IMG/VR virus record: IMGVR_UViG_3300017917_002434
Location: 62,001-126,000 of that record
DNA length: 64,000 bases
Reading direction: 5' to 3' (one strand)
The position numbers and the translations under genes were made by a program. This document shows, piece after piece, positions 47,454 through 61,716 of the stretch. Position 1 is the first letter of the stretch. Each line of letters starts with the position of its first letter. The notes beneath the pieces were generated by a model that saw only the letters and a program-made list of their open reading frames with translations, did no database searches and was not told the DNA's origin.

Positions 47454-47760
47454 AAAATACTTCAAGCCGCCCAAAGATGTTATAAAAGAATGGCCTGAAG
47501 TATTCGAAGAGATATACATGAGCTCGATGCCCATTAAGTATATCCATGGAGTAGAACTAACCTTTCACGACGGCAGAGTTTGGGAAATTGATCTTCCAGA
47601 ACAACTAGATCTAGTTGACGAAGATGATATTTTGGAAAAACTTTCTGAAGGTATCAGAGATTTCCAAGATGAAATCGTTACCGTTAACTTTCAAGTTGAC
47701 ATAGACCGACTTAAACAAGATATTTTAAAATTAACAAAAAACATATTAGGTGACAAATGA
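47446..47760 (+). CDS. Hypothetical protein
   Basis: GTG start; coupled ORF. Confidence 0.55.
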   Translation: MPKKYFKPPKDVIKEWPEVFEEIYMSSMPIKYIHGVELTFHDGRVWEIDLPEQLDLVDEDDILEKLSEGIRDFQDEIVTVNFQVDIDRLKQDILKLTKNILGDK

Positions 47761-48422
47761 ATGTTAATCTCGTTTCCTATTCACAACCCACAGGTCAATT
47801 TAGACAGTTGGGTATCGAAGACGCACAGGAACTCATCGCGTATTGTGCCCGTGTCAGCAATCCCGCAAACCAACTTAACACCGAGACATCAGAAAAACTC
47901 ATCAGATACTTGGTCAAACACAAACACTGGTCACCACTCGAAATGGTCTCAGCCTGTATCGAAATCACTACAACCAGAGATATCGCAAGACAGATCCTTA
48001 GACACAGAAGTTTCAGCTTCCAAGAATTCAGTCAGCGATATGCTGATCCTACTAAAGACCTCTCGTTTGTGGTTAGAGAAGCACGACTTCAAGACCCAAA
48101 GAATCGACAGAACAGTGTCGAAACGGATGACGAACGCCTACAACGAGATTGGGAACTTAGACAAAACAATGTCATCACAGAAGCCAGAATGGCCTACCAA
48201 TGGGCTATCGATAATGGCATAGCCAAAGAACAGGCTCGTGCTGTACTGCCAGAAGGTTTAATTGAAAGTAAACTTTATATGAATGGAACGCTACGTAGTT
48301 GGATTCATTTTATTGAATTACGTAGTGCTAACGGCACACAAAAAGAACACCAAGAAGTTGCGATAGCCTGTGCTAAAGTTATCTCAGAAATATTTCCGTT
48401 AACTAACGATTTTATTGGTTAG
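47757..48422 (+). CDS. thyX: Flavin-dependent thymidylate synthase
   Basis: HWSPLE, RQILRHRSFSFQEFSQRY, EQARAVLP, LRS. Confidence 0.95.
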   Translation: MNVNLVSYSQPTGQFRQLGIEDAQELIAYCARVSNPANQLNTETSEKLIRYLVKHKHWSPLEMVSACIEITTTRDIARQILRHRSFSFQEFSQRYADPTKDLSFVVREARLQDPKNRQNSVETDDERLQRDWELRQNNVITEARMAYQWAIDNGIAKEQARAVLPEGLIESKLYMNGTLRSWIHFIELRSANGTQKEHQEVAIACAKVISEIFPLTNDFIG

Positions 48423-49800
48423 TAATTTTCCACTGATCATATATAGATCGCATTTCGGGGAACGTGCTTAAAAAGTTCGTTCCTCGTCTTTTATCGTGTT
48501 CATCAACAAACGCTACAAAATCTTTTCTGATTGTAGGCAATAAATTTTCGTCGTATCTATGGTCTTCTGCCCATTTGGCTACACGTTGAAATTTTGATAA
48601 TTCCGTGCTATCAAAATGTTTATAACTTAAATTATCAACTTTAGTTTTCATGTAATCAATAGCTTTATATAAACGTTGTATCTGATCGTCGTTGGCTATC
48701 TGTAAACTAAGATGTGGTGGTTCTAAAAGATACGGAGTATCCATCTGTATTCTTCGATTGAATCTTGTATTATATTTTTGTCTTAATTCTAAAATTTTAT
48801 CTAATAATTCTTCGAAATTATAAATGCTTAAAAGATTAACTGTTATCATAAATCCTAATTTACCGTTAGGAACTTCGTTAAGATAACGATGTATATTATT
48901 TTCCCATTGGACTAAATCTAATCCATTTCTAATATATTCTGCTTGATTACCCCAAGTATCAACACTAGTGTAAAGCATAATCTCTTTTACTTTTTTGTTT
49001 TCTTTTAAAGATTTAGCACGAACGATAAATTTATCAAGATTACGCTGCGGTACACTCATATTACTATTAATAGCGAATTGTAAATCTGATCTTGGATGGT
49101 CTTCTATGTAATCTAACATCTTCATGAAATTAGTACTTAATAATGGTTCTCCTCCGGTTACTCTTAGAGTCTCTAAATTTTTATAGCACTCCGGAAACCA
49201 TTGCCAAAAAGCATCAATGTAGGGATTATTCTCTTCTTTATATACAGTACGAGCTTTAGGATTAATTGCGTATTGCCTACGATTAGGCATATATTGTAAA
49301 GGATATTCTCCGTGTTTTTTGATCTCTCCTTCCCAAGCACTGCTAATAGTTGGAGCACAATATATACACTTCATCTGGCATTCTGAACCAAAACTTAATT
49401 CCATATATCTAGGATAAACATCAGCATCCCATGGTAAATTTTTTACATACTCGATACTCGGAATGGTATTTTCAAATTCCCAACTTCTTAAATGTCTGTC
49501 ACTGATTTGGCCTAGATCTTCTAGTGCCCAACAATAACTACATTCTTGAGGACGTTCGCCCTCTAACATCATCTTCCTTTGTTGTTTTTTATAATTACTA
49601 TTGTGTAATGCCGCAGGATTATTGTTCACTTCATCAACACTGACTCTGTGCATAGAAGGATGATAACAACTATGGTTATCTCCGGTATGAAGATGTATTG
49701 TGACCATGTGCCACTTAGCTAGACAAAACCCTTTACCTGTTTTATCTAGTTCATTAGCAATCTTGATATATTTTTTATTCGGGTCTCGACGCCAAAACAT
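48412..49800 (-). CDS. Radical SAM protein with N-terminal auxiliary Cys (twitch-like) domain
   Basis: CQMKCIYC, TGGEPL; N-terminal CLAKW..SCYH..CSYCW. Confidence 0.85.
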   Translation of the reverse strand: MFWRRDPNKKYIKIANELDKTGKGFCLAKWHMVTIHLHTGDNHSCYHPSMHRVSVDEVNNNPAALHNSNYKKQQRKMMLEGERPQECSYCWALEDLGQISDRHLRSWEFENTIPSIEYVKNLPWDADVYPRYMELSFGSECQMKCIYCAPTISSAWEGEIKKHGEYPLQYMPNRRQYAINPKARTVYKEENNPYIDAFWQWFPECYKNLETLRVTGGEPLLSTNFMKMLDYIEDHPRSDLQFAINSNMSVPQRNLDKFIVRAKSLKENKKVKEIMLYTSVDTWGNQAEYIRNGLDLVQWENNIHRYLNEVPNGKLGFMITVNLLSIYNFEELLDKILELRQKYNTRFNRRIQMDTPYLLEPPHLSLQIANDDQIQRLYKAIDYMKTKVDNLSYKHFDSTELSKFQRVAKWAEDHRYDENLLPTIRKDFVAFVDEHDKRRGTNFLSTFPEMRSIYDQWKITNQ

Positions 49801-50458
49801 ACTGTTCTTTTAAAAAATTAAAATCGTTGATTTTTCTTAAATCGTCAATGCTGTGTTTATATCTATGACCATATTCTCTTCCTTCACGGGCACCATTTAA
49901 ACATTCTTGAGAAAACTCGTTTCCGTTGGCTTTCTCGCACCAAACGTCTAGTCTATATTCGTCATCATACTTATTTCTATTTTTAATAGCAGAAGACGAA
50001 AGTTTTACGCATTCTCTAAATGCGGTACGCCAAGTATGAAATTCGCTTGAGTTAAATCGATGTATATTTAAAGTTAAATCCACGTGTTCAATTTTACCAA
50101 AAAAACTTGTAGAAAAATCAACAACTTCAGTATCAGTAAAAAAAGATTTTTTAAATATTTTTATAGCACCGTGTCCGTACTCTAGACCATTTATTGGATT
50201 TCTAGCAGAAAAAATATACATCTTGTTTTGGTCAATGATGCTGTCATATACCTTAGACATCTGAAAACTATCTAGCAGATACGCATCAGAATCAATAACT
50301 AAAAACATATCTGTAATAGATCTATCTCCGCAAAGTTTGTGAGATTCAGCTATGTTCGTTTTGGTAGTAAAAAGATTAAGATCATTTATTTTAGATTTTG
50401 CTACTAAGAAATTTTCCGCTAAATTAGGATCGTCGTAGCTTAGGAAGAACTTTTCCAT
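49775..50458 (-). CDS. Glycosyltransferase-like protein (GT-A, DxD)
   Basis: SYDDP, VIDSD, NPINGLEYGHGAIK, WRTAFRECVKL; paralog of the adjacent gene. Confidence 0.6.
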   Translation of the reverse strand: MEKFFLSYDDPNLAENFLVAKSKINDLNLFTTKTNIAESHKLCGDRSITDMFLVIDSDAYLLDSFQMSKVYDSIIDQNKMYIFSARNPINGLEYGHGAIKIFKKSFFTDTEVVDFSTSFFGKIEHVDLTLNIHRFNSSEFHTWRTAFRECVKLSSSAIKNRNKYDDEYRLDVWCEKANGNEFSQECLNGAREGREYGHRYKHSIDDLRKINDFNFLKEQYVLASRPE

Positions 50459-51357
50459 ACTGGATCCTTATTATAATAAGTTTGACCTAATGCCACTGTT
50501 TCAGCATATAAGTCTGTGATATATTTGCTTTGTTTAGGATCAAAGGTTGTGAGGTCTAATCCTATACCTGCTCGTATTTCGAAAGCTAAAGAATCTAATG
50601 TTTCTAATATTTTATTTCTGTCACCTTCCATCTCAGCATATTCACTATCGTATATCTGTCTGATACATTCAAAATCTCTTACGTTTATATGATTCCAGTC
50701 AGTACAGTAAGTCATATAACTTCCGGCCCTTGCTCCTAACATAGCATAGATACCATTTTCTACATGATCTCCCACGCAGCTCCATATTTTTAATCTGTGT
50801 AAATTGTGCCAGTAAATTTGAGTAGCTACTGAAGTGCTGTTAACTTTTAATCCATCTTTCAGTAGCATCTTAACGCCTTCACGAAAACCTGCTCTCCATG
50901 CTTGGTATGGAGTGGCATTTATAACTGTCTTGCTGAAAACTGTAGGGTGATTAAGGTACCCTTCTTCCCAACAAAAATCTACCTGTGCTCTAGATTCTAC
51001 AGCAGCTTCGTGTGTACGCATATTGCTTACGAATTCTTTGTTCCAGATTTTTAATCCGCCGTTGCCGTATCTTAAATTATTAATTACATTCTCTCCAGAC
51101 CATCCGTAGACCTGTATTCCTGATGTTTCTTTTATCTCAATTTGAAAAAATTTATCGTCAACAATGTTATCCCCATCTACGGTTACGAACCATTCTGTCT
51201 CGGATATCTCAGCTGCGGCTTTATGAGCGTTATCGCTACCTTTGATTCCGTGTATTCTTTTTGCGTAGGGAACTTTATTACACAGATCCGCATAATTAAA
51301 ATCTGCGTTTGGTTCATCGTAGGAAATAAAAATAATATCTAATTCTGATGTTTTCAT
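50440..51357 (-). CDS. Glycosyltransferase-like protein (GT-A, DxD)
   Basis: SYDEP, TVDGD, N.INNLRYGNGGLK, WRAGFREGVKM. Confidence 0.6.
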   Translation of the reverse strand: MKTSELDIIFISYDEPNADFNYADLCNKVPYAKRIHGIKGSDNAHKAAAEISETEWFVTVDGDNIVDDKFFQIEIKETSGIQVYGWSGENVINNLRYGNGGLKIWNKEFVSNMRTHEAAVESRAQVDFCWEEGYLNHPTVFSKTVINATPYQAWRAGFREGVKMLLKDGLKVNSTSVATQIYWHNLHRLKIWSCVGDHVENGIYAMLGARAGSYMTYCTDWNHINVRDFECIRQIYDSEYAEMEGDRNKILETLDSLAFEIRAGIGLDLTTFDPKQSKYITDLYAETVALGQTYYNKDPVWKSSS

Positions 51358-51929
51358 GTTATTGTATAAACTATGTTTAATTTTTTTCTATGATAAAAAC
51401 TAATTTGATTAGCGAACAATTTTTTATAATCGCAGCGATCTATATCGTATATCATTTCATCTGAAACAAATTTGTTTAAGTCAAGTTCGAAAGTTTGATA
51501 ATGACAATTAATATCATTTTTTCCAGTCAAATGAATATGAGTTTTATTTTTATAAGAATTTACTTTTAAAGACTCGTCACCTAAAAATTTTATTTTTAAT
51601 ACCGGCTTATTTTCTAAACTAGTCACTTCGAGTTTTATCTCAGCAGTAACATCTTGTGATCTGTGTACATATGGAATTGACAATAATTTATTATATGTGA
51701 GATCAGCAGTCGCTACACGTTGATCGACTAAATCAATCTTACTTCCATTTGTAAAGACTTTAAAATCTGTAAACAATCTAGGTATAGAATCACTGTCATT
51801 AAGTTCATTTAATTTCTTTTGATTTACTTTAAATGACTTTCTAGTATCAACAGAATTTTCTATCTCAGTAGAAGATACTTTTATAATAGTGCCCGAACTT
51901 GTTTCAAATAGAATGTAAAGATTATCCAT
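51354..51929 (-). CDS. Hypothetical protein
   Basis: Coupled within the GT operon. Confidence 0.55.
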   Translation of the reverse strand: MDNLYILFETSSGTIIKVSSTEIENSVDTRKSFKVNQKKLNELNDSDSIPRLFTDFKVFTNGSKIDLVDQRVATADLTYNKLLSIPYVHRSQDVTAEIKLEVTSLENKPVLKIKFLGDESLKVNSYKNKTHIHLTGKNDINCHYQTFELDLNKFVSDEMIYDIDRCDYKKLFANQISFYHRKKLNIVYTIT

Positions 51930-52776
51930 GAGTTATCTTCATACGTTTTAAAAATTCTGTTTGATAAATTTGTATTAAGGATCCAACGTCTAGATCCTTA
52001 TCCGAATAATGTAAAAGTTCGGTCTGATTAAAAATTCCAATTTTAAAAGTGTTTTCGTTAAAATAATAACCGAGGTCGTCTTTGATAGTTCCCCCATTAA
52101 CACCATCTTGTAAAATAGATTTTAGATGAGTGAATCTAGGAAAGGCTAGGGGATAAGATATTTCATGTTCTATGTCTAAAATTTTTGCGGCAAGAGCAAA
52201 TGATTCATCTGTTCCAACGACTTCAGGAGTTTGTTTAGGTAAAAAGAAATTCTTAAATTCTCTAGGATTTTCTATTATTTTTCTATTTAGATCAAAAAAA
52301 TCTTTAGATTTATCTGTTTTTGAAAAAAAGGTATAAGCAGAATAAAGCATAGGCAGATCGTTGACCTTAAATGCCTTTCTACAATAGTCATTAAGTAGTT
52401 CGTCGCCATTGTACTGAAGTACTCTATTAGCAACATAAAGATAGCTTTCCCTTATAAAATAATCAATCCAATGACTTGTATCTCTAAAGAAAATCATATC
52501 AGTATCTAGGCAAACTGTATATTTCCACGGAGATAATTCATCCATATAAGATCTACCGTCCCAATGTGTTTTCTTATCCCAGAAACCAACTGTGTCAAAA
52601 TAAGGCATTCCTCTGAACCAAGATAGTTTGTCTTTATCATCTGTTATCAAAGCAACACGATCGTACCCATACTTCTGTGTTCTCTTTATAGAAAGTGCTA
52701 ACAACACAGCCATCAGATCGTACCTATGAGCTGTGCTTTTAGATATTATAATAAGGTACCCAAAATCGTTATTCAA
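51922..52776 (-). CDS. Glycosyltransferase-like protein (GT8-like)
   Basis: LALSIK, VALITD, SPW..TVCLDTDM, GTDE.FA, LHY. Confidence 0.65.
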   Translation of the reverse strand: MNNDFGYLIIISKSTAHRYDLMAVLLALSIKRTQKYGYDRVALITDDKDKLSWFRGMPYFDTVGFWDKKTHWDGRSYMDELSPWKYTVCLDTDMIFFRDTSHWIDYFIRESYLYVANRVLQYNGDELLNDYCRKAFKVNDLPMLYSAYTFFSKTDKSKDFFDLNRKIIENPREFKNFFLPKQTPEVVGTDESFALAAKILDIEHEISYPLAFPRFTHLKSILQDGVNGGTIKDDLGYYFNENTFKIGIFNQTELLHYSDKDLDVGSLIQIYQTEFLKRMKITHG

Positions 52777-53542
52777 CTACTGCCTCCTGTAGACTAAATT
52801 TATTCATTATATGAACATCTACATCAACAACGATATCATCGATTAAAATATTGTCTTTATCAAATCGTATGTTTTTAAAACTTTCAAGTGCCATCATTGG
52901 ACTTGGTAACAAATTGTCTGTAACAACGAATCCATGTGCTATGTGATTAGCTATGGTAAAAGCAAAGTCATTTCTAAAACTTGTTGGCGGCAAGTTATAT
53001 AGATCAATAAAATAAAACCAATTTTCTTTTACATATTCGACAATTTTAAAAATATGCTCTACAGTGTCAGTTTTTGAAAACATAACAGCCGTGGCCCATC
53101 TCATAGGAATAGTTGTCGGAGATAGTTTTATCGTGTCCTGTGATAATTTGCTACCTATCGGTAACATACTTTCGGTGATAAGAAATTCTTTTTCCGAATA
53201 CCAATAAGAATCTAATCTATCAGTAAGTATAAAAAAATCCGAATCGATTAATAGAGTCCGTTCGTAAGGAGAATAATCAAAGGCCGAGAATCTATTCGTA
53301 TTAATAAAATCAATATGTCGAGCATCTAATAATCTAGTATTTGAACTGTCTGGTCTATCGATAATCAATAGATTATCAATATTTTTTAAATTTGAACTAG
53401 TGTTTGTTACAGATTCTCGATCTGTTATTAACGTCACAGGCACGTTTAAATTTTTCGCAGCGTAGCCAGCTGCGACATTAGACAACTTTACATAATCTAT
53501 GTCTTTAGAATTATGTCCGAATATTACTACACCTTTATCCAT
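52769..53542 (-). CDS. Glycosyltransferase-like protein
   Basis: PVTLITD, SPYERTLLIDSDF, RNDFAF, HIMNK. Confidence 0.65.
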   Translation of the reverse strand: MDKGVVIFGHNSKDIDYVKLSNVAAGYAAKNLNVPVTLITDRESVTNTSSNLKNIDNLLIIDRPDSSNTRLLDARHIDFINTNRFSAFDYSPYERTLLIDSDFFILTDRLDSYWYSEKEFLITESMLPIGSKLSQDTIKLSPTTIPMRWATAVMFSKTDTVEHIFKIVEYVKENWFYFIDLYNLPPTSFRNDFAFTIANHIAHGFVVTDNLLPSPMMALESFKNIRFDKDNILIDDIVVDVDVHIMNKFSLQEAVVE

Positions 53543-53858
53543 TTTTTAGATCTTGATATCCAGCATTATATCTTCCTAAAGCCATGAAATATCGATCTAA
53601 GATATCTTTTTGAAATTGAGATAAATTTTCTATTACGACCGGTGTATGATTAATATCTAATAAAATTACGTTCTGCTGTTTGTTTATAGACAGAAGAAAA
53701 TTTACATAAGTTATTAGTTGCTGATCAATCTTAAAAATTCCGCCGTTATAACCAAAAGTGATATCAGCATCAAAACGCTCTCTAAGAAGTTGGCGTTTGA
53801 TTTTTGCTGACAGCAATCTGTCAGATTTTTTAATTATAGATTCAAGAGATTTTTCCAT
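53535..53858 (-). CDS. Hypothetical protein
   Basis: YNGG.FKI; first gene of the GT block. Confidence 0.6.
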   Translation of the reverse strand: MEKSLESIIKKSDRLLSAKIKRQLLRERFDADITFGYNGGIFKIDQQLITYVNFLLSINKQQNVILLDINHTPVVIENLSQFQKDILDRYFMALGRYNAGYQDLKNG

Positions 53859-53897: not shown

Positions 53898-55127
53898 TTA
53901 TAGGTTATTTGTGAAGCTAACTAGAAGTTGTGTAGCTGGATCCCATCCTAGAGGAATAGGTGTCTTAGTGTATATGGCATTTACGTTAAATTGAATATCA
54001 GCTGTTACACCGCCAGTGAATGCGTTTGAAACCTGATCTTGTAACAATAGATTAAATTGAATAACATTTGGCTGACCGACTACTCTAAAATGTTCCATCT
54101 TTATATAATTTGATGTATAGGGCGAAGTAGTGGCAAATTTTTCGTAGATCGTTGTGAATCCAACTGTACTAGATGCGAACGCACCTTCCGCTGTAAAATT
54201 ATTTGTATCGCTGGTTCTGTCAGGTAAGAATGTCGTAGAATCGTAACCCATGACTGCCTTAGTAAATCCCGTGTAATACATAGGGAAGTTATTATTGATC
54301 AATGTCTGCCAAGAACCTTCTTTAGCTGCCTGTTGACCTGTGGTCTGAACGTTAGATATGACAATATTAAATCTTATCATACCTCCAGTATTCCAATATT
54401 GGAAAAATCTAAGTTCGTCTGGCCACGAAATAGTAAATGTAGCATCGATACCAGAAGCACCGTCACCCCATGTAGCGGTCTGGCTACGTGTGGCTATTAA
54501 CACATTATCAAAGGTTCTTAAAACTAATTTTTTTGTTAGTGCCTGATCGATGGCGGTATAATATTGATTATACACGTTTCCCTGTATCGTTGTATTTCTC
54601 GTGGGCGACGTAGTGCTGGAATTAATGGCAAAAATATGTTGAAACACAGCATCTAAGTCTAACTTAATACGATCAAACTGACTCTTATGTACGATAGGTT
54701 GAGTTACACTACCATTGCCTGTAGCATATGCGGGCAAACTAGATCCTTGTAAAAAGGTATCTTTTAACGCAAAAGAATTAGTAAGAGCATTAACAACTTC
54801 AAAATACTGCCCCTCTAAGGACGACGATGCCCAAGAACCGGGCAGTCCTGATAGATAAACAATGTCACCGTTTTGGAATCCGTGTGCTGTTTGGGTAGTG
54901 ACCACAGCGGGGTTGGTTTTCGAAATAGTAGAAATTGTTTTAGTGAATGGATAAGGAGCAGAATTTAAAAATGCTGAAGTTAATCCGTAACCGTTGCCTC
55001 TGGCTGAATTTAAAGGTTTCCCAGTATTGTCCACAGCAATAGGACCGATAATACCTAACAGTGTATTATATAAATTGTCCCAGTCACTAAATGATATCGG
55101 TGTTACACCCGGCGTAATTGTCGGCAT
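53898..55127 (-). CDS. Putative virion/tail protein
   Basis: ISKTNPAVVT...HGF..GD.V.L beta module; T/S/N-rich; follows the fibre genes. Confidence 0.55.
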   Translation of the reverse strand: MPTITPGVTPISFSDWDNLYNTLLGIIGPIAVDNTGKPLNSARGNGYGLTSAFLNSAPYPFTKTISTISKTNPAVVTTQTAHGFQNGDIVYLSGLPGSWASSSLEGQYFEVVNALTNSFALKDTFLQGSSLPAYATGNGSVTQPIVHKSQFDRIKLDLDAVFQHIFAINSSTTSPTRNTTIQGNVYNQYYTAIDQALTKKLVLRTFDNVLIATRSQTATWGDGASGIDATFTISWPDELRFFQYWNTGGMIRFNIVISNVQTTGQQAAKEGSWQTLINNNFPMYYTGFTKAVMGYDSTTFLPDRTSDTNNFTAEGAFASSTVGFTTIYEKFATTSPYTSNYIKMEHFRVVGQPNVIQFNLLLQDQVSNAFTGGVTADIQFNVNAIYTKTPIPLGWDPATQLLVSFTNNL

Positions 55128-55136: not shown

Positions 55137-56933
55137 TTATAATACTAGAGCTTCTACTATTTTTATTCCTGTGTCATCTGATGATTCTAATGCGATGGCA
55201 AATACTTCAGTGTACTGATGGAAACTAGCATGAACAGCACAGCCATTATTTGATGCTACTAACCTATCTCCCTTCTTAATAGAACCAACTACTTTAACTG
55301 GCACACGGCCCTTTAAAGCTATATATGTTCCGTTTTCTAAATCTTCGTTCATTCTGAACGCTGGTTTCTCTGAAACCACGCCTATGGCTCTATCTCCAAA
55401 TTGTGCTTCTCTAACTTCTGCTGATCCGCCTATGGCTACAACGGTTCCTACTTCATAATCTTTATCTGCTAGATATTTTTCTGCTAAGTCAGCGTAACGT
55501 GAGCTAGTCGATGTACCATTAAAAAATCTAGCATTAATGTCAGCACCAGCTGTTCTTAAAACAACAGTATCTGGATCTTTATCTACTGATGGCAATCTAC
55601 CTTCAACGGCCTGTGTATTTGTTGAAGTACCGTTAAACAATACAGCACTAATAGTTCCAACAGCAGTTCTAATAGGTATTGATGCCGATCCTGGTAAAGC
55701 TAGATCGCTAGGATTATAGATATTCGCACCTACTTGTAATCTCGTAGCTGATATCGCAGACGACGCTTGACCTACTATAGGACCAGCAAATTCACCTTCA
55801 AATCGTCCGTAGAATGTTCTCGTATCAGCATCAAAAGAAATAACATTTGAATTGTCTCTAACACTACCCTTGTGTACTCCTGTGCTGTTACCAAGAACGT
55901 TGCCTTCAACATCACCAAATAAATGATTGGCAAAAATTTTGTTCCACTTCTTTCCAGCATATCCTAGATTATATTTGGATGTAGAACCTGGGAGTATACA
56001 AAATTCAGAATCGGGATCAGCAACATCAAAAATCTGTCTAGAGAAAATCATCATATCATCTTTATCGACGTTAGATCCTCCAGTACTGATTCTAACAAGA
56101 ATTTGACCATTAATCTGATTTTCTATAATAGGCTGTTGACCTACAGATGAATTAACATAAATTTTTAAATCTTTTCTTGTACTAGTTCCAACAGTTAGAC
56201 CTGCTTGAAAGCCGATAGTGTTATTAAATCCGCCCTCGATATCTGAGCGAATATAATTTGACGGAGACACTCCACCTAGTTTAAGAGCATCACTAGCTGT
56301 TCCCCAGAATACCTGTCCGGTACTCACGCCAGTAGAGTTTACGGAATTTAATGTAATACCTTTCTTGACCTGCCTGCCTGTTTCTGAAAAACCAGCGATA
56401 GTATTTGAAGTTGAAAGTGTAAAATCGTCATCATTGCTGAAAATAGCAGTAGTAACACCACCTACCACAGCACGTAATATAACATGGCTGGTATTGTTAG
56501 AGTCTTTTACTACCTGTGTAACGATCTGTGATGTACCGAATCCTGGGGCACTTTGAGGACCAATCAAAACAAAGTTAGATCCGTTCCAGGCCGATAATTG
56601 ATTAGTGTTAGTGTCAAACCAAAGATCGCCTGCGGTCAATCCAGGTGGCGGAGTTGAAGCAATCTCAGCACCGCTGGCTACCTTGAATTTTGTGCCATCG
56701 TAAAATTTTAATTTTTTGTTAACAGAATCAAACCATATCTGTCCTACAATAGGTTTAGAAGGCGGTATTGTATTTGCGAAATTTTCTAGTAAATGGAGGA
56801 AATTTTCGTTTTGTACTTCGCCGTAGCCCGTATAATTTCTACCTACAAACTTAAGATCTGTAGTATTGTCAATGGTGCCATCGGCAACATTCGTTAAAAA
56901 AGTTCCATTATATCTGTCTACGCGGTATGTCAT
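55137..56933 (-). CDS. Tail fibre protein with C-terminal YADLAE-type chaperone-like domain
   Basis: Shared fibre N-terminus; YADLAEKY...GVVSEKPA..MN...ALKGRVPVKV. Confidence 0.7.
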   Translation of the reverse strand: MTYRVDRYNGTFLTNVADGTIDNTTDLKFVGRNYTGYGEVQNENFLHLLENFANTIPPSKPIVGQIWFDSVNKKLKFYDGTKFKVASGAEIASTPPPGLTAGDLWFDTNTNQLSAWNGSNFVLIGPQSAPGFGTSQIVTQVVKDSNNTSHVILRAVVGGVTTAIFSNDDDFTLSTSNTIAGFSETGRQVKKGITLNSVNSTGVSTGQVFWGTASDALKLGGVSPSNYIRSDIEGGFNNTIGFQAGLTVGTSTRKDLKIYVNSSVGQQPIIENQINGQILVRISTGGSNVDKDDMMIFSRQIFDVADPDSEFCILPGSTSKYNLGYAGKKWNKIFANHLFGDVEGNVLGNSTGVHKGSVRDNSNVISFDADTRTFYGRFEGEFAGPIVGQASSAISATRLQVGANIYNPSDLALPGSASIPIRTAVGTISAVLFNGTSTNTQAVEGRLPSVDKDPDTVVLRTAGADINARFFNGTSTSSRYADLAEKYLADKDYEVGTVVAIGGSAEVREAQFGDRAIGVVSEKPAFRMNEDLENGTYIALKGRVPVKVVGSIKKGDRLVASNNGCAVHASFHQYTEVFAIALESSDDTGIKIVEALVL

Positions 56934-56971: not shown

Positions 56972-57460
56972 TTATTCGAAATTCTGCTTTTTTGCTATGA
57001 TTTCTTTCTCTTCGGCCTCTGAAACAAAGGTAAAAGCACCCGCATTAGACGAATAAGACTGTATCTGATCTTTATGATTTTGCTTGGCAGCATCTAGAAA
57101 CTCTTTCATAGCTGCGAATTCTGGCGTTTTTGCCATATCGCTCTTTTCTAACATATCAATTATTATGTTGATCTGCTTATGTATAGGATACTCAGTAAGT
57201 ATAGTAACGTTAGTATTATACTTTACATAAGATTCTGTGATCACTGGTTTATCTGCCCTAGATCTTACCTCACCTGTGGTGTAGTCTCCGTACCAATAAT
57301 CACCAGCATCTTCGTCAAGCTCTACCGTCTTAGTAACGAAGCTATCAAAATTTAACGCTGAGCGATCTGTATCGGGAGTTATTTCACCTATAAGAACACC
57401 AGTGCTTTTTATAAAAAGTAATTCTCTTGCTATTTTGGCCATTATCCTATCCTTCCCCAA
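56972..57460 (-). CDS. Hypothetical protein (possible fibre accessory)
   Basis: Lies between fibre genes; likely start MAKIAREL. Confidence 0.55.
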   Translation of the reverse strand: MGKDRIMAKIARELLFIKSTGVLIGEITPDTDRSALNFDSFVTKTVELDEDAGDYWYGDYTTGEVRSRADKPVITESYVKYNTNVTILTEYPIHKQINIIIDMLEKSDMAKTPEFAAMKEFLDAAKQNHKDQIQSYSSNAGAFTFVSEAEEKEIIAKKQNFE

Positions 57461-57939
57461 GCTAATACTAAACTGTATTTAGATTTTTCATTGGGTCCTA
57501 TTTCTGTAACTTCATGTTCTAAATGTAAAGGCATGTCTATCAGAGAACCCGGCTCCTCTTCTACTAGATGATCAACACCATGGTCATCATAATACTTAAA
57601 ATGTGGTTTATCACTGCGAAGAAAAATTAATTTAAACTTCCAATAACCGCCTATGCTGTCTTTATGTCTAAGCAGATAATCGCCCGGATCATATCTGTTG
57701 ATAGTCATACTAGTAATAAATCTCGAATCATCTGGAATCGTTCTAGTAATAGCAGACTTAAGATTATCATCCATGTTAAAATGAAATAAACTTTTTAATT
57801 TGCTGCTACCATAGGAAGTCTTAAAATTGTGTGTATCAGTTGAGGTGCGGTTAGAGAACTTATCGCTATGCTTTTCTGCTAGTTCGATAATTTCATCTAC
57901 GTTACTAACATAGTTTTTCACTAGTTTAACCTGAGACAT
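57442..57939 (-). CDS. 2OG-Fe(II) oxygenase
   Basis: INRY.PGD.L.RHKD (HxD), distal HEVTEI, KYSLV. Confidence 0.8.
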   Translation of the reverse strand: MSQVKLVKNYVSNVDEIIELAEKHSDKFSNRTSTDTHNFKTSYGSSKLKSLFHFNMDDNLKSAITRTIPDDSRFITSMTINRYDPGDYLLRHKDSIGGYWKFKLIFLRSDKPHFKYYDDHGVDHLVEEEPGSLIDMPLHLEHEVTEIGPNEKSKYSLVLAWGRIG

Positions 57940-59707
57940 ATTCCCAACTCGATTGTATTGTGTTAACTCGATAAATCAATAGATTGTTTCTCGACGGATT
58001 TGATACAGTTGTGGTAACCGAAACGTTACTAACAAATGAAACGCTGATCCAACTTCCTCTAGACACAGATGTCGATGTTGAAACGTTTTGTATAGTACTA
58101 GCAATATGTGCCAACGTTCCTACACGGAAGTTTAAGGGTGGTGCTAGTTGATTTAATAGACCTGCTACAGATCCCGGACCGGAACCAGTTGTTGACAAAC
58201 CATTAGTGTCTAAACTGAAGTACAGTGTTCTATTAGCTATCTGATCGTCAACATATTTTTTCGTGGCGGCATGTTTCTCATTGATCGGATCATCTACTAG
58301 TGTCAGATAACCGGTCATTATTCCACCAGCTTTAGCTACTCTAGTATCATCAACTACTTCTATATTAGCCGAACCGTCAAATGCTACACCGTTAATAAAT
58401 TTAGGCGATTGTAGTTTTGATGCTGTTTCTGCATTACCAACTAAAGAACCTGTAAATATTTTTGTTCCGGCATTGAACGCAAGTGTGTTATCACTAGCGA
58501 TAATATCACCTTTAACATCACCAACAACTTTATCTATTAGGATTAATAAATCTGTAGTTAAGTTTGTAAATGATCCAGATGCTCCTGTAAATGCTTTAGC
58601 TGAAGAATCAAAACATAGCGAACCATCTGCTGCTCTAACATCACCTTTTTGTGTACCTATATGTGTGCCATAAAATTCTTTTAGGCTACCGTCGAACATA
58701 ACTTGATCGTCTTCGGCTAATAAATCACCTTGAAGAGATCCTACTACGTTTCCAAATACATCTTTGGCGTGTATTTCCTTCCACTTTTTAACATTTGATC
58801 CTAGATTATAAATTTCAGTAGTATTAGGATCCATTCCTGCTTCTGAAAATATCGCGACATCGTTGTTAATAACTCCGTTCTTAATACGAATTTTCAGCGG
58901 ACCATTGAGCTGACTGGATATTACAACCTTGTTAAAATCTTCAACAAATATTTTTAAATCATTATCGTCGCCTACTGTAAACCCTGTATCGCCGAATGTA
59001 GATCCATTCATGCCTCTCATTACAAAATCAGCAGTAGTAAATCCAGAAAATTTATCCGAATTACTAGCTGTACCCCAATATCTATACTGGGTAGACGTTA
59101 CTCCACTGGCAGGTGTATCAACTAAAGTAAATCCTTTTCTGATCGTGGTAAAACCATCAATAGTATTGATAACGCCTATATCAAACTGATCATTACTGAT
59201 AACTGCGATAACTTTATCGTTATCAAAAACTTTAATTATAGGATATTCTACGTTGCTGTTATCCCTGATAGTTCCAGAACTTAGTTTTGTTTCGCCAAAA
59301 CCTACAGCTATTTCCGGTCCGATAATTTTATAATCCACACCATCCCAGATGTTTAATTGATCTAGTGCATCATTATACCACAGATTTCCTTTATCTTTAA
59401 CTGATAAACCCGTAGGAGCAGTCGCAGATACATCTGCCACTGCTACTGTTTTCCATGCCTGTGTATCATCATAGAACTTTAATTTATTGTTTAGTTCATC
59501 GTACCATATCTGGCCGATGATAGGTCTTCTAGGTGCTGCGAAACCTCTAAAGTTTTCTAACAAATGTAATACATTTTCATTTGTGACTTCGCCATACCCG
59601 GCATAGTTTTTGCCGATTAATTTCAAGTCACAGCTAGAACTATCAACCGTCTGATCGGGTACTTCTACAAAAAACGACCCGTTATATCTATCAATCTGGT
59701 ATGGCAT
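57926..59707 (-). CDS. Tail fibre protein
   Basis: Shared N-terminus; A.TA.KL...INGV.FDGS and HAATKKYVD fibre motifs. Confidence 0.75.
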   Translation of the reverse strand: MPYQIDRYNGSFFVEVPDQTVDSSSCDLKLIGKNYAGYGEVTNENVLHLLENFRGFAAPRRPIIGQIWYDELNNKLKFYDDTQAWKTVAVADVSATAPTGLSVKDKGNLWYNDALDQLNIWDGVDYKIIGPEIAVGFGETKLSSGTIRDNSNVEYPIIKVFDNDKVIAVISNDQFDIGVINTIDGFTTIRKGFTLVDTPASGVTSTQYRYWGTASNSDKFSGFTTADFVMRGMNGSTFGDTGFTVGDDNDLKIFVEDFNKVVISSQLNGPLKIRIKNGVINNDVAIFSEAGMDPNTTEIYNLGSNVKKWKEIHAKDVFGNVVGSLQGDLLAEDDQVMFDGSLKEFYGTHIGTQKGDVRAADGSLCFDSSAKAFTGASGSFTNLTTDLLILIDKVVGDVKGDIIASDNTLAFNAGTKIFTGSLVGNAETASKLQSPKFINGVAFDGSANIEVVDDTRVAKAGGIMTGYLTLVDDPINEKHAATKKYVDDQIANRTLYFSLDTNGLSTTGSGPGSVAGLLNQLAPPLNFRVGTLAHIASTIQNVSTSTSVSRGSWISVSFVSNVSVTTTVSNPSRNNLLIYRVNTIQSSWEYVSG

Positions 59708-59719
59708 TACTTGCTCCTA

Positions 59720-60091
59720 TTATTCTGTTATACTATCTGCGGCAGTCTGTCTTTGCTGCTCTAATTCTAAATATTCTTGCTCACTCAATGATGTTGATAT
59801 TCCTAACGCCTTCTCTCTCATATGTCGCAATACTTTCCAATCAGTGCGATTTAAAAATTCTCTATGTACACTGTTAGTGCTGTATGTAGATTTTGCCAAT
59901 GTCTGTTCGGCAGTTAACGCTTTTACTGTATTAGTAACGGTATCAAAATAATGTGTGTCAGAAACAATCTGATCATATTGCTCGTCAGTTATACCAACGA
60001 CCTGTACACTATTCGGTGTGTTTGGTTGATAATTTAATATCGCCGTTATTTGATTATTTTCTAAGCAGACGTAGTGCATTCTTAACTCCAA
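59720..60091 (-). CDS. Putative tail fibre assembly chaperone
   Basis: R.FL..TDWKVLRH...RQ.A motif; lies between fibre genes; start may be MHYVC. Confidence 0.6.
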   Translation of the reverse strand: MELRMHYVCLENNQITAILNYQPNTPNSVQVVGITDEQYDQIVSDTHYFDTVTNTVKALTAEQTLAKSTYSTNSVHREFLNRTDWKVLRHMREKALGISTSLSEQEYLELEQQRQTAADSITE

Positions 60092-61704
60092 ATAGCCAGC
60101 CAGTTAGCAGCTGGGGTTGATCTCTGTTCTGTATTCTGTACCCATACACGTATACGATCTCCGAGATTAGACCAAATACATCTCAAACTATCGTTACCAT
60201 CTACACCGCCAGCATAATGTATAACAGCGATTGATGGAATAAATGCTTTAAGATTAGACATTGTTTTACCAGCTGGTGGATAAACATCGAAAAAATTCGC
60301 ACCGTTGTTAAATGATCCAACTTGATTAGTAAATCCTGTAGTACTATATTGTGTATTTCCGTAGGTTATTGTATAATTTGTGGGAAATAAAGCAACAACT
60401 TCATTCTTAATAATCTGATCTCTATCATCGACATATTGCTTAGTAGCAGCACCCAATCCTGTGGTAGGATCGTTAGCGAGTACCAACGGACCTAGTAATG
60501 TTCCTCCTGTAGTAGGAAATTTAGTATTATCAAATATTGTAATACTAGATTGTCCGTTAAAAGAAACATTGTTTATCAAAACATCATTTAATAATCTTGT
60601 AGCCGTCGAAGCATTACCTGTAAAAGTTCCTGTAAATATTTTTGTGTTGCCATCGTAGGCTACAGAATTATCAGCAGCTAACAGGCTTCCTTTAAGATTA
60701 CCTATTACACTGCCTGTTAAAGAACCAGTTACGTCGCCGGTTACATCACCTATAACATTACCTAAAACATTTCCTGTAACATTACCGATAACATTTCCAG
60801 TGACTCCGCCCACTACTGGACCGGTGTGTGTTCCTACAGAATTTCCTGTTAGGTTAGCTACTACTGTATTGGCTGCGAAATTTCCCGATCCGTCTCTTAC
60901 AACAACAGTTCCTTGGACATTATTAGAAGATGCGTTCAATGTCCAAGAAATAGGTGCTGAACCGTCAAAGTCAGAGCCTGTTATATATGTTCCTGCTGTT
61001 AATTTGTTAGTGGTTGATGCTTTAACAGTAATATCGGTAGATCCATTGAATGCTACACCGTTAATATTTCTAGCAGTCGCTAATGCGTTTGCTGAAGTAG
61101 CATTACCAATAACATTACCGTTTAATGCTGATGTGCTAGAAAAGTTAATACCTTTTACAAATGAGGTAAATCCTACAATAGGTGATAAAGGACTAAACGC
61201 CCTATCAGCTACTATAGCTATAATAGCATCGTTTATCAGTGCTTTAATTACAGGAATATCGTTACCTAATGAATCAACAATTTTATCTGAGACAAATCTG
61301 GTATTTCCAAATCCTGCTACTGTTTCTGGACCAACAAATTGAAAATCTGTACCGTCGTACACATAAAATTTTCCAGAATCGCTGTCATACCAGCCATCGC
61401 CTTCCGATGGATCTACTGGTTCCGATGCTGATATTTTTGTACCGCCGACAAAATTCCAAGTAGAACCGGAATAAACTTTTATTTTTTTACTAACTGTGTC
61501 GTACCATATCTGTCCTGTCAACGGTTTGCCCGGAGCGATGCCGCTGGCGAAGTTTTCTAACAACCACACAAAATTTTCATTTTGTGTTTCGCCGTAACCG
61601 GCAAAGTTTTTTCCTACCAAATTTAAGTTGGTAGTAGAATCAAGAGTACCGTCTTCTAGTATTACTAGTCGTTCTCCGTTAAATTTGTTAATTTGATATG
61701 GCAT
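60082..61704 (-). CDS. Tail fibre protein
   Basis: Shared N-terminus; GNVxG repeats; AATKQYVD. Confidence 0.75.
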   Translation of the reverse strand: MPYQINKFNGERLVILEDGTLDSTTNLNLVGKNFAGYGETQNENFVWLLENFASGIAPGKPLTGQIWYDTVSKKIKVYSGSTWNFVGGTKISASEPVDPSEGDGWYDSDSGKFYVYDGTDFQFVGPETVAGFGNTRFVSDKIVDSLGNDIPVIKALINDAIIAIVADRAFSPLSPIVGFTSFVKGINFSSTSALNGNVIGNATSANALATARNINGVAFNGSTDITVKASTTNKLTAGTYITGSDFDGSAPISWTLNASSNNVQGTVVVRDGSGNFAANTVVANLTGNSVGTHTGPVVGGVTGNVIGNVTGNVLGNVIGDVTGDVTGSLTGSVIGNLKGSLLAADNSVAYDGNTKIFTGTFTGNASTATRLLNDVLINNVSFNGQSSITIFDNTKFPTTGGTLLGPLVLANDPTTGLGAATKQYVDDRDQIIKNEVVALFPTNYTITYGNTQYSTTGFTNQVGSFNNGANFFDVYPPAGKTMSNLKAFIPSIAVIHYAGGVDGNDSLRCIWSNLGDRIRVWVQNTEQRSTPAANWLAIWS

Positions 61705-61716
61705 GTCGCTCTTCCA

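What the first reader, a model, noticed from the sequence alone, without database searches (positions are those of the whole stretch)
48412..53858. Glycosyltransferase-radical SAM operon downstream of tail fibres: candidate virion glycosylation system
Seen: seven overlapping minus-strand genes continuing the fibre transcription unit. They comprise two pairs of paralogous DxD GT-A-like proteins, two unknowns, and a radical SAM enzyme with extra Cys. None has an evident signal peptide, and the block looks more AT-rich than its flanks (not measured). Inference: a late pathway that builds and radically tailors a glycan on virion proteins (the fibres are very S/T/N-rich), or modifies the host surface receptor. 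It is separate from the early DNA-modification GT.
Basis: partly seen in the sequence, partly recalled or inferred. Interest (0 to 1): 0.72.

Follow-up and report, generated by a model that had tools for sequence, protein, structure and literature searches.

The report
Fibre-linked glycosyltransferase and radical SAM cassette
A freshwater jumbo phage carries, directly after its tail-fibre genes, a conserved seven-gene block of four sugar-adding enzymes, one radical SAM enzyme and two small unknown proteins that most likely decorates the fibres with a tailored sugar chain, though the target has not been shown.

Summary
Seven overlapping minus-strand genes (48412-53858) follow the fibre genes. 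They include two paralogous pairs of DxD enzymes and a radical SAM protein with four extra N-terminal cysteines. None has a membrane segment. The block has the lowest GC of the 269.7-kb genome.

Structure models (pLDDT 94) show both pairs are GT-A glycosyltransferases. p257/p284 resemble retaining GT8/GT6 enzymes such as glycogenin. p305/p227 resemble GT2-type enzymes, with the chlorovirus capsid glycosyltransferase A64R as top hit. The radical SAM protein belongs to NCBIfam N_Twi_rSAM. The other six have no Pfam, PHROG or NCBIfam family.

The cassette is widespread: at least 592 IMG/VR contigs and 1,227 protein clusters at 50% identity for p305. Gene order was fixed downstream of fibre genes in every informative locus. 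The only cultured phage with it is Ralstonia phage RsoM2USA, where all genes are annotated hypothetical.

Best reading (about 0.5): a late cytoplasmic pathway that glycosylates fibre proteins. The acceptor is inferred from synteny only. Rivals are host envelope modification, a glycosylated peptide or metabolite, and DNA modification. I rate it a new variant of virus-encoded protein glycosylation.

The parts
48412..49800 (-). Radical SAM enzyme (462 aa) with an N-terminal twitch-type auxiliary Fe-S domain. It is the last gene of the unit and converges on thyX.
   Evidence: It matches NCBIfam NF033640 N_Twi_rSAM at 2.1e-95, 320 bits against a cut-off of 170. CX3CX2C lies at C141/145/148, the GGE motif at 216-218, and C26/C45/C87/C90 are invariant. 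The N-terminal part of the profile aligns to the BtrN twitch domain (E 4e-4). The core aligns to SkfB, Tes, YydG, viperin and MoaA.
49775..50458 (-). p227: short GT-A glycosyltransferase, paralog of p305.
   Evidence: BLASTP to p305 gives E 2e-17. D56/D58 and R148/E149 are conserved. It is 37% identical to RsoM2USA gp348. The domain is fused in tandem with a p305-like domain in other genomes.
50440..51357 (-). p305: GT-A glycosyltransferase domain (about aa 1-147) followed by an alpha-helical C-terminal domain.
   Evidence: The AF2 model has pLDDT 94.4. The top Foldseek PDB hit is PBCV-1 A64R (E 2.9e-5), followed by GT2 enzymes and SunS/ThuS. VIA-align gives Z 9-11 to B4GALNT1, WrtF, STIV A197, SpsA and A64R. 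AFDB neighbours are GT2-like. The best PDB match by profile is GmaR at the DxD motif (E 0.027). Relatives carry fusions to GT-B domains and Sel1 repeats. The protein has no Pfam, PHROG or NCBIfam hit.
51354..51929 (-). p191: conserved slot protein of unknown fold, the fastest-evolving member of the cassette.
   Evidence: A 190-216 aa ORF fills this slot in 78 of 78 loci. hhalign of the p191 group against the slot family gives probability 96%, E 3e-9. RsoM2USA gp351 matches the slot HMM at 7.8e-12. It has no Pfam or PDB match. The Atlas model is poor, with pLDDT 0.59.
51922..52776 (-). p284: GT8/GT6-like GT-A glycosyltransferase, paralog of p257 (TTG start).
   Evidence: hhalign to the p257 family gives probability 99.7%, E 1.3e-25 over 260 columns. 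D91/D93, H256 and K260 are conserved. It is 30% identical to RsoM2USA gp352.
52769..53542 (-). p257: GT8/GT6-like (retaining-type) GT-A glycosyltransferase.
   Evidence: The AF2 model has pLDDT 94.1. Foldseek PDB hits are GTA/GTB, glycogenin, alpha3GalT and GlyE (E about 3e-6, probability 1.0, TM 0.45-0.51). The only PDB matches by profile are glycogenins, aligned at the DxD motif (E 0.3). One homolog carries PF01501. D100, D102, H244 and K248 are invariant.
53535..53858 (-). p107: small conserved first gene of the block. It may be a fibre-assembly-type accessory protein (lead only).
   Evidence: It is conserved in RsoM2USA gp354 (E 1e-10) and in all loci with room for it. Its ESM-feature neighbours include DUF4376 clusters at 0.90. 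It has no Pfam hit.
53898..55127 (-). p409: S/T/N-rich fibre-module protein immediately upstream, and a candidate acceptor.
   Evidence: It has a weak match to PHROG 584 'major tail protein' (4.6e-7). S+T+N is 28.9%. Homologs sit at the same place in relatives.
55137..56933 (-). Tail fibre (598 aa) with the shared N-terminal fibre domain and a C-terminal intramolecular-chaperone cleavage domain.
   Evidence: It matches PF11962 Peptidase_G2 IMC domain at 3.8e-6, above the cut-off. The N-domain is found in 90 cultured jumbo myoviruses, annotated as tail fibre or structural protein.
57926..63783 (-). Three further fibre paralogs (593, 540 and 688 aa) with the same N-terminal domain, plus a small interspersed ORF (123 aa).
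   Evidence: ORF layout is.
47757..48422 (+). ThyX. It is convergent, overlaps the radical SAM stop by 11 nt, and marks the end of the minus-strand unit.
   Evidence: It matches PF02511 Thy1 at 1.9e-45.

Best explanation
The block is a conserved cytoplasmic glycosylation module genetically tied to the tail-fibre module of a freshwater jumbo myovirus. The phage is distantly related to the Rak2/XacN1/RsoM2USA group.

Shown:
- Two GT8/GT6-like (retaining-type) GT-A enzymes, p257 and p284.
- Two GT2/A64R-like GT-A enzymes, p305 and p227. All four keep DxD and other family-invariant residues.
- One N-terminal-twitch radical SAM enzyme with intact SAM and auxiliary cluster motifs.
- Two small conserved proteins, p107 and p191.
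- Translational coupling of all seven genes, and a fixed position after the fibre genes.

Inferred: the genes are transcribed late with the fibres. In the cytoplasm the four transferases act in sequence, using nucleotide sugars, to start and extend a short glycan on a fibre or other virion protein before or during assembly. The radical SAM enzyme either tailors a sugar (its auxiliary domain resembles BtrN's) or modifies the acceptor protein (its core resembles the peptide maturases SkfB and YydG). p107 and p191 would act as fibre-side or specificity accessories.

Relatives vary the number of GT domains and carry 1 to at least 4 radical SAM copies. This suggests the product is a diversifying surface structure. 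Confidence that this is a glycosyltransferase plus radical SAM pathway making a glycoconjugate is about 0.9. Confidence that the acceptor is a fibre or virion protein is about 0.5.
For: Folds and motifs.

Radical SAM identity.

Rosetta-stone fusions of the p305 domain to GT-B (GT1/GT28-type) domains, and tandem p305-like fusions.

Synteny in IMG/VR:
- 30 of 30 loci with at least 7 kb upstream have fibre N-domain genes.
- 54 of 54 keep the order p107-p257-p284-p305.
- 56 of 56 with room downstream have the radical SAM gene.

The same arrangement is seen in 11 of 12 more divergent phage contigs (p305 41-51% identical). It is also seen in RsoM2USA, where gp355 (fibre N-domain) is followed by gp354-348 next to the tail sheath and tube genes.

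The proteins are soluble. Genes overlap, with no terminator between the fibres and the block.

The fibre identity of the neighbours is supported.

Phage-encoded NDP-sugar epimerase/dehydratase genes lie elsewhere in the genome, and near the cassette in RsoM2USA (gp358).

The nearest structural analogues include enzymes that glycosylate proteins, some of them surface filaments or capsids: A64R, GmaR, GlyE, glycogenin and SunS.
Against: - No direct evidence identifies the acceptor. No glycoproteomic or expression data exist, and no RNA run was listed.
- Most syntenic loci belong to one lineage, so part of the synteny is inheritance rather than independent association.
- Of 90 cultured phages with the fibre N-domain, only RsoM2USA matched p305 or the radical SAM protein in the phage collection. 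The fibres therefore do not need the cassette.
- The p305 + p227 + N_Twi radical SAM triad occurs in Bdellovibrionia chromosomes with no fibre genes nearby. Lone p305 homologs sit in Rhodobacterales glycosyltransferase clusters. The enzymes are therefore not intrinsically fibre-specific.
- GT-A folds are shared with nucleotidyltransferases at similar Z.
Confidence: 0.5

Rival explanations
1. The cassette makes a glycosylated, radically tailored peptide or small molecule that is not part of the virion. The product could be glycocin- or RiPP-like, or a metabolite. It might serve in host takeover, competition or signalling.
For: - The GT + GT + N_Twi radical SAM triad stands alone in Bdellovibrionia chromosomes, beside two more radical SAM genes.
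- The radical SAM core is closest to the peptide maturases SkfB and YydG.
- p305 resembles the glycocin S-glycosyltransferases SunS and ThuS, including the helical domain.
- The genome carries at least 11 radical SAM genes, a tryptophan-halogenase-like gene, a carbamoyltransferase and a hydroxylase-like gene.
- In relatives up to five radical SAM genes follow the cassette.
Against: - No precursor peptide, transporter, protease or immunity gene was seen in the block.
- The strict placement after fibre genes across divergent phages is not explained.
- The p257/p284 pair, p107 and p191 were seen only on phage or phage-like contigs, not on the bacterial chromosomal loci.
Confidence: 0.15
2. The enzymes modify a host envelope glycan during infection. 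The target could be LPS, capsule or a receptor. The effect could be to block superinfection, or to stop progeny being trapped on cell debris.
For: - GT-A enzymes of the GT2 and GT8 types commonly build LPS and capsule (LgtC-like, WrtF, TarP and TarS among the hits).
- The genome encodes an ADP-heptose-6-epimerase-like protein and a GalE/LegB-like protein.
- Rhodobacterales homologs lie among other glycosyltransferases.
Against: - None of the seven proteins has a membrane segment, and no flippase, polymerase or lipid-carrier enzyme is present.
- The genes are linked to fibre genes rather than to early or lysogeny genes.
- No integrase-type context was seen in the window.
Confidence: 0.15
3. The cassette hypermodifies phage DNA, for example by glycosylating a modified base with radical SAM tailoring.
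For: - Phage glycosyltransferases often target DNA, as reviewed in PMC12619734.
- thyX abuts the cassette.
- Replication genes fill the adjacent plus-strand region.
Against: - thyX is on the opposite strand and converges on the cassette.
- No thymidylate-synthase-type hydroxymethylase (PF00303) was found in the record, which is 76% complete.
- The block is co-oriented and coupled with fibre genes in all relatives.
- The closest structural matches are protein and glycan transferases.
Confidence: 0.07
4. The proteins are non-catalytic fibre assembly or structural factors that merely keep a glycosyltransferase-like fold.
For: - The genes sit inside a structural module.
- p107 has a DUF4376-like feature signal.
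Against: - DxD and further catalytic-type residues are invariant across hundreds of homologs in all four GT-like proteins.
- The radical SAM cluster and SAM-binding motifs are intact.
- None of gp347-355 is among the abundant RsoM2USA virion proteins identified by mass spectrometry.
Confidence: 0.03

Closest known systems
Mycobacteriophage virion glycosylation (Freeman et al. 2023, as summarised in PMC12619734)
   Same: Phage-encoded glycosyltransferase genes sit with the structural genes, act in the host cytoplasm and decorate virion proteins with glycans.
   Different: In mycobacteriophages the glycans were shown, on the capsid and tail tube C-termini. Here the target is only inferred, and the neighbours are fibres. 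This cassette has four GT-A enzymes from two unnamed families, plus a radical SAM enzyme and two accessory proteins. Homology to the mycobacteriophage enzymes was not tested.
Chlorovirus PBCV-1 A64R and the virus-encoded capsid glycosylation machinery
   Same: A64R is the top Foldseek PDB hit of p305 (E 2.9e-5, VIA Z 9.3). It is a soluble viral GT-A enzyme with a DxD motif that glycosylates a virion protein independently of host secretory machinery.
   Different: Identity is only 12-15%, and only the roughly 147-residue GT-A core aligns. The host is eukaryotic. No radical SAM partner is involved, and p305 has an extra helical domain.
GT8/GT6 retaining glycosyltransferases (glycogenin, LgtC-type, GTA/GTB, GlyE of the pneumococcal serine-rich-repeat adhesin pathway)
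   Same: p257 and p284 share the fold (Foldseek E about 3e-6, TM about 0.5) and the DxD plus distal His...Lys pattern. Glycogenin and GlyE act on proteins in the cytoplasm.
   Different: The window proteins do not reach any Pfam GT8 threshold. Identity is 10-14%. Donor, acceptor and stereochemistry are unknown.
GmaR (Listeria flagellin O-GlcNAc transferase) and SunS/ThuS glycocin S-glycosyltransferases
   Same: All have a GT-A domain followed by a helical or TPR-like domain, and act on a protein or peptide. GmaR is the best PDB match by sequence profile, at the DxD motif (E 0.027). SunS aligns over 174 residues (Z 8.7). Some p305 relatives carry Sel1 repeats.
   Different: The matches are weak and limited to the core. 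No flagellin or precursor peptide was identified here.
NCBIfam NF033640 N_Twi_rSAM (twitch domain-containing radical SAM protein)
   Same: The 462-aa protein is a full-length member at 320 bits against a cut-off of 170.
   Different: The family has no assigned reaction, and no paper mentioning it was found. Its pairing with the two p305-type transferases is, as far as I could find, undescribed.

Membership tests
GT-A fold glycosyltransferase, GT8/GT6-like (p257, p284) | GT-A (Rossmann-like alpha/beta/alpha) fold superposable on solved GT8/GT6 enzymes | tested here: met
   The p257 model has pLDDT 94.1. 357 PDB matches have E<=1e-3, led by GTA/GTB, glycogenin, alpha3GalT and GlyE, with probability 1.0 and TM 0.45-0.51. 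p284 is tied to p257 by hhalign at probability 99.7%.
GT-A fold glycosyltransferase, GT8/GT6-like (p257, p284) | DxD metal/nucleotide-sugar motif plus a distal His (and Lys) | tested here: met
   D100, D102, H244 and K248 are invariant in 66 p257 homologs. In 34 p284 homologs D93 and H256 are invariant, and D91 and K260 are at least 90% conserved. The DxD aligns with that of glycogenin. Spatial equivalence of the His and Lys was not checked.
GT-A fold glycosyltransferase, GT8/GT6-like (p257, p284) | Match to Pfam PF01501 (Glyco_transf_8) at the gathering score | tested here: not met
   Neither protein hits at E<=0.1. Only 1 of the 120 listed homologs carries PF01501.
GT-A fold glycosyltransferase, GT2/A64R-like (p305, p227) | GT-A fold with the DxD after beta-4 | tested here: met
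   The p305 model has pLDDT 94.4. VIA-align gives Z 9-11 over residues 1-147 to B4GALNT1, WrtF, A197, SpsA and A64R. The top Foldseek hit is A64R, and AFDB neighbours are GT2-like. D61/D63 and D56/D58 are conserved. Nucleotidyltransferases of the same superfamily score Z 8-9.5, so the fold alone does not exclude them. The absence of a G-rich N-terminal loop and the presence of DxD favour a transferase (my reading of the sequence).
GT-A fold glycosyltransferase, GT2/A64R-like (p305, p227) | Match to Pfam PF00535 (Glycos_transf_2) or another curated GT family | tested here: not met
   Neither protein matches Pfam, PHROG or NCBIfam. None of the 120 listed homologs has a Pfam domain.
NCBIfam NF033640 N_Twi_rSAM | Full-length HMM score above the curated cut-off, CX3CX2C, and an N-terminal Cys-rich twitch domain | tested here: met
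   It scores 320.2 bits against a cut-off of 170, covering profile positions 2-398. C141/C145/C148, GGE and C26/C45/C87/C90 are invariant. The N-terminal part aligns to the BtrN twitch domain.
Phage virion glycosylation system (mycobacteriophage type) | Glycosyltransferase genes embedded in the structural (late) gene module | tested here: met
   The block is directly downstream of and co-oriented with the fibre genes, here and in RsoM2USA and the metagenomic relatives.
Phage virion glycosylation system (mycobacteriophage type) | Glycans demonstrably attached to virion proteins | not testable with these tools
   This needs glycoproteomics. The RsoM2USA paper identified only the abundant virion bands, and none of gp347-355 is among them.
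Phage DNA glycosylation (T-even type) | A hydroxymethyl-pyrimidine synthase (thymidylate-synthase family) that provides the acceptor base | tested here: not met
   PF00303 was not found in the 269.7-kb record, which is 76% complete, so absence is not proven. Only ThyX is present.
Seroconversion Gtr-type host O-antigen modification | Membrane-embedded GtrA/GtrB/Gtr(type) proteins | tested here: not met
   None of the seven proteins has a hydrophobic segment (maximum Kyte-Doolittle 19-residue mean 1.18).
Glycocin or radical SAM RiPP cluster | A precursor peptide gene, plus a transporter or protease, next to the maturases | tested here: inconclusive
   No such gene was recognised among the seven ORFs or their flanks. 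Small ORFs under 50 aa were not examined. p107 and p191 have no assigned role.

The most novel reading that the evidence does not exclude
Tail fibres of a large, globally distributed lineage of aquatic jumbo phages mature like RiPPs. Four dedicated glycosyltransferases and a family of N-twitch radical SAM enzymes install a glycan, radical-derived sugar or amino-acid modifications, or both, on the receptor-binding proteins. The radical SAM family is expanded to as many as five contiguous copies next to the cassette in relatives, and to at least 11 radical SAM genes in this genome. This variable chemistry would set host range or shield the fibres. If so, it would assign a first function to the N_Twi_rSAM family and define a new class of post-translationally modified phage receptor-binding proteins.
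Probability: 0.15. Interest if true: 0.85.

Novelty: new variant of a known kind. Interest (0 to 1): 0.62.

Why it matters
Virion glycosylation by phage-encoded enzymes has been shown experimentally only in mycobacteriophages. Outside phages it is known in giant viruses of eukaryotes.

This cassette would extend it to Gram-negative-type jumbo myoviruses and to the receptor-binding fibres. There a glycan could affect host recognition, resistance to proteases or lectins, or decoy binding.

Scale and annotation gap:
- p305 has 7,204 clusters at 90% identity and 1,227 clusters at 50% identity.
- At least 592 IMG/VR contigs carry a relative.
- Near-identical DNA occurs in at least 20 freshwater, river, lagoon and aquaculture metagenomes.
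- Six of the seven proteins have no Pfam, PHROG or NCBIfam family.
- In the only cultured carrier, RsoM2USA, all seven genes are annotated as hypothetical.

The cassette also gives a testable genomic context for the uncharacterised N_Twi_rSAM family. It defines two glycosyltransferase families that could be added to annotation resources.

Tried and rejected
- DNA search (megablast) of the cassette and of 24 kb of the window against 50,697 phage records found no match.
- Pfam, PHROG and NCBIfam gave nothing for six of the seven proteins.
- The radical SAM protein as a single sequence against PDB gave nothing useful.
- p191 has no Pfam hit shared by more than one of 39 family members, and no meaningful PDB profile match. 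The ESM Atlas model is poor, and its structural neighbours (TM about 0.4) are not interpretable.
- p107 vs the 123-aa ORF between the fibres showed no similarity.
- Complex prediction with p284 + p305 + p191 as partner gave no support (score 0.00, controls not run). This is not evidence for or against binding.
- No RNA sequencing run was listed for p305, so co-transcription with the fibres could not be checked.
- I asked whether the genome is a 'moraphage', a lineage reported with four core putative glycosyltransferase orthogroups (PMC12619734). No DnaK or glutamine synthetase was found, so I did not pursue it. The record is incomplete, so this is not decisive.
- p165 (57442-57939) was tested as a possible 2OG oxygenase. 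It has no Pfam or PDB support by sequence or profile, so only the motif pattern remains.
- Literature searches for the N_Twi_rSAM family, for jumbo phage radical SAM enzymes and for fibre glycosylation found no description of this cassette. The Freeman 2023 paper is not held.
- One family-search call failed because of a mistyped reference.
- Low GC as a sign of recent foreign origin was rejected as weak evidence. GC3 is nearly the same as in the fibres, and the bias is conserved in 26 of 26 relatives.

Full report
**Source of the window.** The window is bases 62001-126000 of a 269,730-bp IMG/VR virus record that CheckV estimates as 76% complete. Near-identical DNA occurs in a pond metagenome and in at least 19 further freshwater, riverine, lagoon and aquaculture runs from 2018-2025. 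It is therefore a real and widespread freshwater phage. The plus strand up to about 48.4 kb carries replication-type genes: a clamp-loader-like AAA+, a ClpB-like ATPase, family B DNA polymerase, a 5'-3' exonuclease and ThyX. From 48.4 kb to the window end the minus strand carries the finding and, upstream of it, a run of fibre genes.

**Observation.**
- All six internal junctions overlap by 4-26 nt.
- The two fibre-module genes upstream are only 39 and 9 nt away.
- Terminator-like sites are no more frequent than in shuffled sequence.
- The last gene overlaps the convergent thyX by 11 nt.
- p227 and p305 are paralogs (E 2e-17).
- p284 and p257 are paralogs (pairwise E 3e-5; family-to-family hhalign probability 99.7%, E 1.3e-25).
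- The two pairs are unrelated to each other at sequence level (hhalign probability 0.9%).
- No protein has a hydrophobic segment.
- The block is the lowest-GC 5.4-kb stretch of the genome (0.324 vs mean 0.387, sd 0.025). The same contrast holds in 26 of 26 relatives.
- GC3 is almost the same as in the fibres. I therefore read the bias as compositional rather than as a mark of recent import.

**The p257/p284 pair.** An AlphaFold2 model of p257, built on 66 diverse homologs, has mean pLDDT 94.1. Foldseek against PDB returns 357 matches at E<=1e-3. They are led by the retaining GT-A enzymes GTA/GTB (GT6), glycogenin (GT8), alpha-1,3-galactosyltransferase and GlyE, with probability 1.0 and TM about 0.5. 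A sequence profile of the family finds only glycogenins in PDB (E about 0.3), aligned at the DxD motif. One homolog carries a precomputed PF01501 hit. D100, D102, H244 and K248 are invariant in the p257 family, and D91/D93, H256 and K260 are conserved in the p284 family. From established knowledge, this is the DxD plus distal His/Lys pattern of GT8 enzymes.

**The p305/p227 pair.** A model of p305 built on 76 homologs has pLDDT 94.4. Residues 1-147 form a GT-A domain.
- VIA-align gives Z 9-11 to B4GALNT1, a Leptospira GT, WrtF, STIV A197, SpsA and PBCV-1 A64R.
- The top Foldseek PDB hit is A64R, the chlorovirus capsid glycosyltransferase (E 2.9e-5). GT2 enzymes and the glycocin S-glycosyltransferases SunS and ThuS follow.
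- AlphaFold-DB cluster neighbours outside the protein's own unnamed family are GT2-like.
- The best PDB match by profile is GmaR, the Listeria flagellin O-GlcNAc transferase, at the DxD motif (E 0.027).
- Residues about 150-300 form a helical domain.
- The DxD (D61/D63 in p305, D56/D58 in p227) and an Arg-Glu pair are conserved in both paralogs.
- In other genomes the p305 domain is fused to N-terminal GT-B (GT1/GT28, UDPGT/EryCIII-like) domains, to Sel1 repeats, or to a second copy of itself. This links it independently to glycosylation and suggests that p305 and p227 work together.

**The radical SAM protein.** It is a full-length member of NCBIfam NF033640, twitch domain-containing radical SAM protein (2.1e-95). 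It has CX3CX2C, GGE and four invariant N-terminal cysteines. A profile of nine relatives aligns its N-terminal part to the C-terminal twitch domain of BtrN. Its core aligns to SkfB, the tetraether synthase, YydG, viperin and MoaA. The substrate class, sugar or peptide, is therefore open.

**The two small proteins.** p191 is a strongly diverged member of a family that fills the same slot in 78 of 78 relatives and in RsoM2USA. It has no recognisable fold or family. p107 is conserved. Its only lead is a language-model resemblance to DUF4376, a domain seen in tail-fibre assembly proteins. I treat that as a lead only.

**Distribution and context.** The only match in 50,697 cultured phage records is Ralstonia jumbo phage RsoM2USA. 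There gp354-gp348 are homologs of all seven genes, in almost the same order; the p227 homolog follows rather than precedes the radical SAM gene. They lie directly after gp355, which shares the N-terminal fibre domain of the window's fibres, and near the tail sheath and a virion structural protein. All are annotated hypothetical.

In metagenomes p305 has 7,204 clusters at 90% identity and 1,227 clusters at 50% identity. At least 592 IMG/VR contigs encode a relative. Counts for the 80 best loci:
- 30 of 30 with at least 7 kb upstream have fibre N-domain genes.
- 54 of 54 keep the order p107-p257-p284-(slot)-p305.
- 56 of 56 with room downstream have one to four radical SAM copies.

More divergent phage contigs, mis-binned into bacterial MAGs, show the same arrangement in 11 of 12 cases. 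Relatives vary the region between p305 and p227 and the number of radical SAM genes.

The fibre N-domain occurs in 90 cultured jumbo myoviruses, annotated as tail fibre or structural protein. One of the window's fibres also has the intramolecular-chaperone cleavage domain. The neighbours are therefore genuine fibres. Because only RsoM2USA in the phage collection matched the cassette proteins, the cassette is an accessory to them.

**Bacterial homologs.** Two kinds exist. Rhodobacterales chromosomes have a lone p305-like gene next to a GT4 gene, a GT28-type protein and a Sel1/TPR/caspase protein. Bdellovibrionia chromosomes have p305-like + p227-like + N_Twi radical SAM, followed by two more radical SAM genes, among housekeeping genes. 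The triad is therefore a mobile functional unit that is not restricted to fibres. The GT8-like pair, p107 and p191 were seen only on phage or phage-like contigs, not on the bacterial chromosomal loci.

**Mechanism.** The following is shown: four soluble GT-A enzymes with intact motifs, a radical SAM enzyme with an auxiliary cluster, translational coupling, and conserved placement after the fibres.

The following is inferred. The genes are expressed late. The transferases build a short glycan on a fibre or other virion protein in the cytoplasm. The radical SAM enzyme tailors the sugar or the acceptor. This would work like serine-rich-repeat adhesin, flagellin or chlorovirus capsid glycosylation.

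Nucleotide-sugar tailoring enzymes are encoded elsewhere in the genome. They are GalE/LegB-like and ADP-heptose-epimerase-like proteins. In RsoM2USA one (gp358) lies three genes upstream of gp355.

I put about 0.9 on a glycoconjugate-building pathway and about 0.5 on a fibre or virion protein as the acceptor. The rivals are:
- a free glycosylated or radically tailored peptide or metabolite (0.15);
- host envelope modification (0.15);
- DNA hypermodification (0.07), weakened by the absence of a PF00303-type hydroxymethylase and by the convergent orientation of thyX;
- non-catalytic roles (0.03).

**Novelty.** Virus-encoded virion glycosylation is known in chloroviruses, mimiviruses and mycobacteriophages (the last as summarised in PMC12619734). 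I found no paper describing this cassette, its two GT families or a function for N_Twi_rSAM. I rate it a new variant of a known kind. Interest is moderately high because of its abundance, its link to receptor-binding proteins and the radical SAM component. That interest is tempered by the lack of any direct evidence for the acceptor.

Noticed in passing
G000:C1 6454-32715 and 258708-259874 (outside the window); window 48412-49800: The genome encodes at least 11 radical SAM proteins. Four are paralogs of the N_Twi_rSAM family, all above the cut-off. One is B12-binding and methyltransferase-like, and several are SPASM- or viperin-like. In relatives up to five radical SAM genes sit contiguously after the cassette.
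   Followed up: partly
G000:C1 14638-16248, 23760-24428, 257785-258711 (outside the window): Other tailoring-type enzymes lie near the extra radical SAM genes. They are a tryptophan-halogenase-family protein (2e-83), a weak Asp/Asn beta-hydroxylase-like protein and a carbamoyltransferase N-domain protein.
   Followed up: no
window 57442-57939 (-): A 165-aa ORF lies between two fibre genes. Across 34 homologs H92-x-D94, H142 and K154-x-S156 are invariant. This pattern is typical of 2OG/Fe(II) oxygenases (my reading). No Pfam or PDB match supports it. It is present in the fibre module of only 5 relatives.
   Followed up: partly
window 48412-53858: The cassette is the lowest-GC 5.4-kb stretch of the whole genome, and it is lower than the fibres in 26 of 26 relatives. 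GC3 is nearly unchanged, so the bias lies in codon positions 1-2.
   Followed up: yes
L123 9983-13147; L126 8483-10924: Bdellovibrionia chromosomes carry a p305-like + p227-like + N_Twi radical SAM triad followed by two more radical SAM genes. Roseibium and other Rhodobacterales carry a lone p305-like gene with GT4, GT28-type and Sel1/TPR/caspase neighbours.
   Followed up: partly
L094, L095, L097-L100, L102, L105, L115, L135, L141: Contigs with fibre genes plus the cassette are filed in MAGs labelled Bifidobacterium, Fischerella, Rickettsiales, Legionellales, Haliscomenobacter and others. They look like phage contigs mis-binned into bacterial genomes.
   Followed up: no
G000:C1 241346-242245 and 219204-220115; L001 1600-2577 (RsoM2USA gp358): The phage encodes NDP-sugar SDR enzymes. 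One is GalE/LegB/RmlB-like. One is ADP-glyceromanno-heptose-6-epimerase-like at 268.9 bits, just under the cut-off. RsoM2USA has a homolog three genes upstream of the fibre gene gp355, which directly precedes the cassette.
   Followed up: partly
window 1792-3162 (+) and 3173-5923 (+): A protein with a major-tropism-determinant N-terminal domain (Mtd_N, 2.8e-10) is followed by a 916-aa protein with He_PIG Ig-like repeats. They lie on the plus strand, far from the fibre module.
   Followed up: no
window 55137-56933 (-): The 598-aa fibre carries a Peptidase_G2 intramolecular-chaperone autocleavage domain. Its 130-residue N-domain is shared with fibres of 90 cultured jumbo myoviruses, including Atu_ph07, PA5oct and Rak2-like coliphages.
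   Followed up: yes
L006 10902-13526; L015-L092: In relatives the p227-like domain is often the C-terminus of a much longer protein (874 aa in L006). The spacing between p305 and p227 varies from about 0.9 to 3.2 kb, so this is a variable region of the cassette.
   Followed up: no
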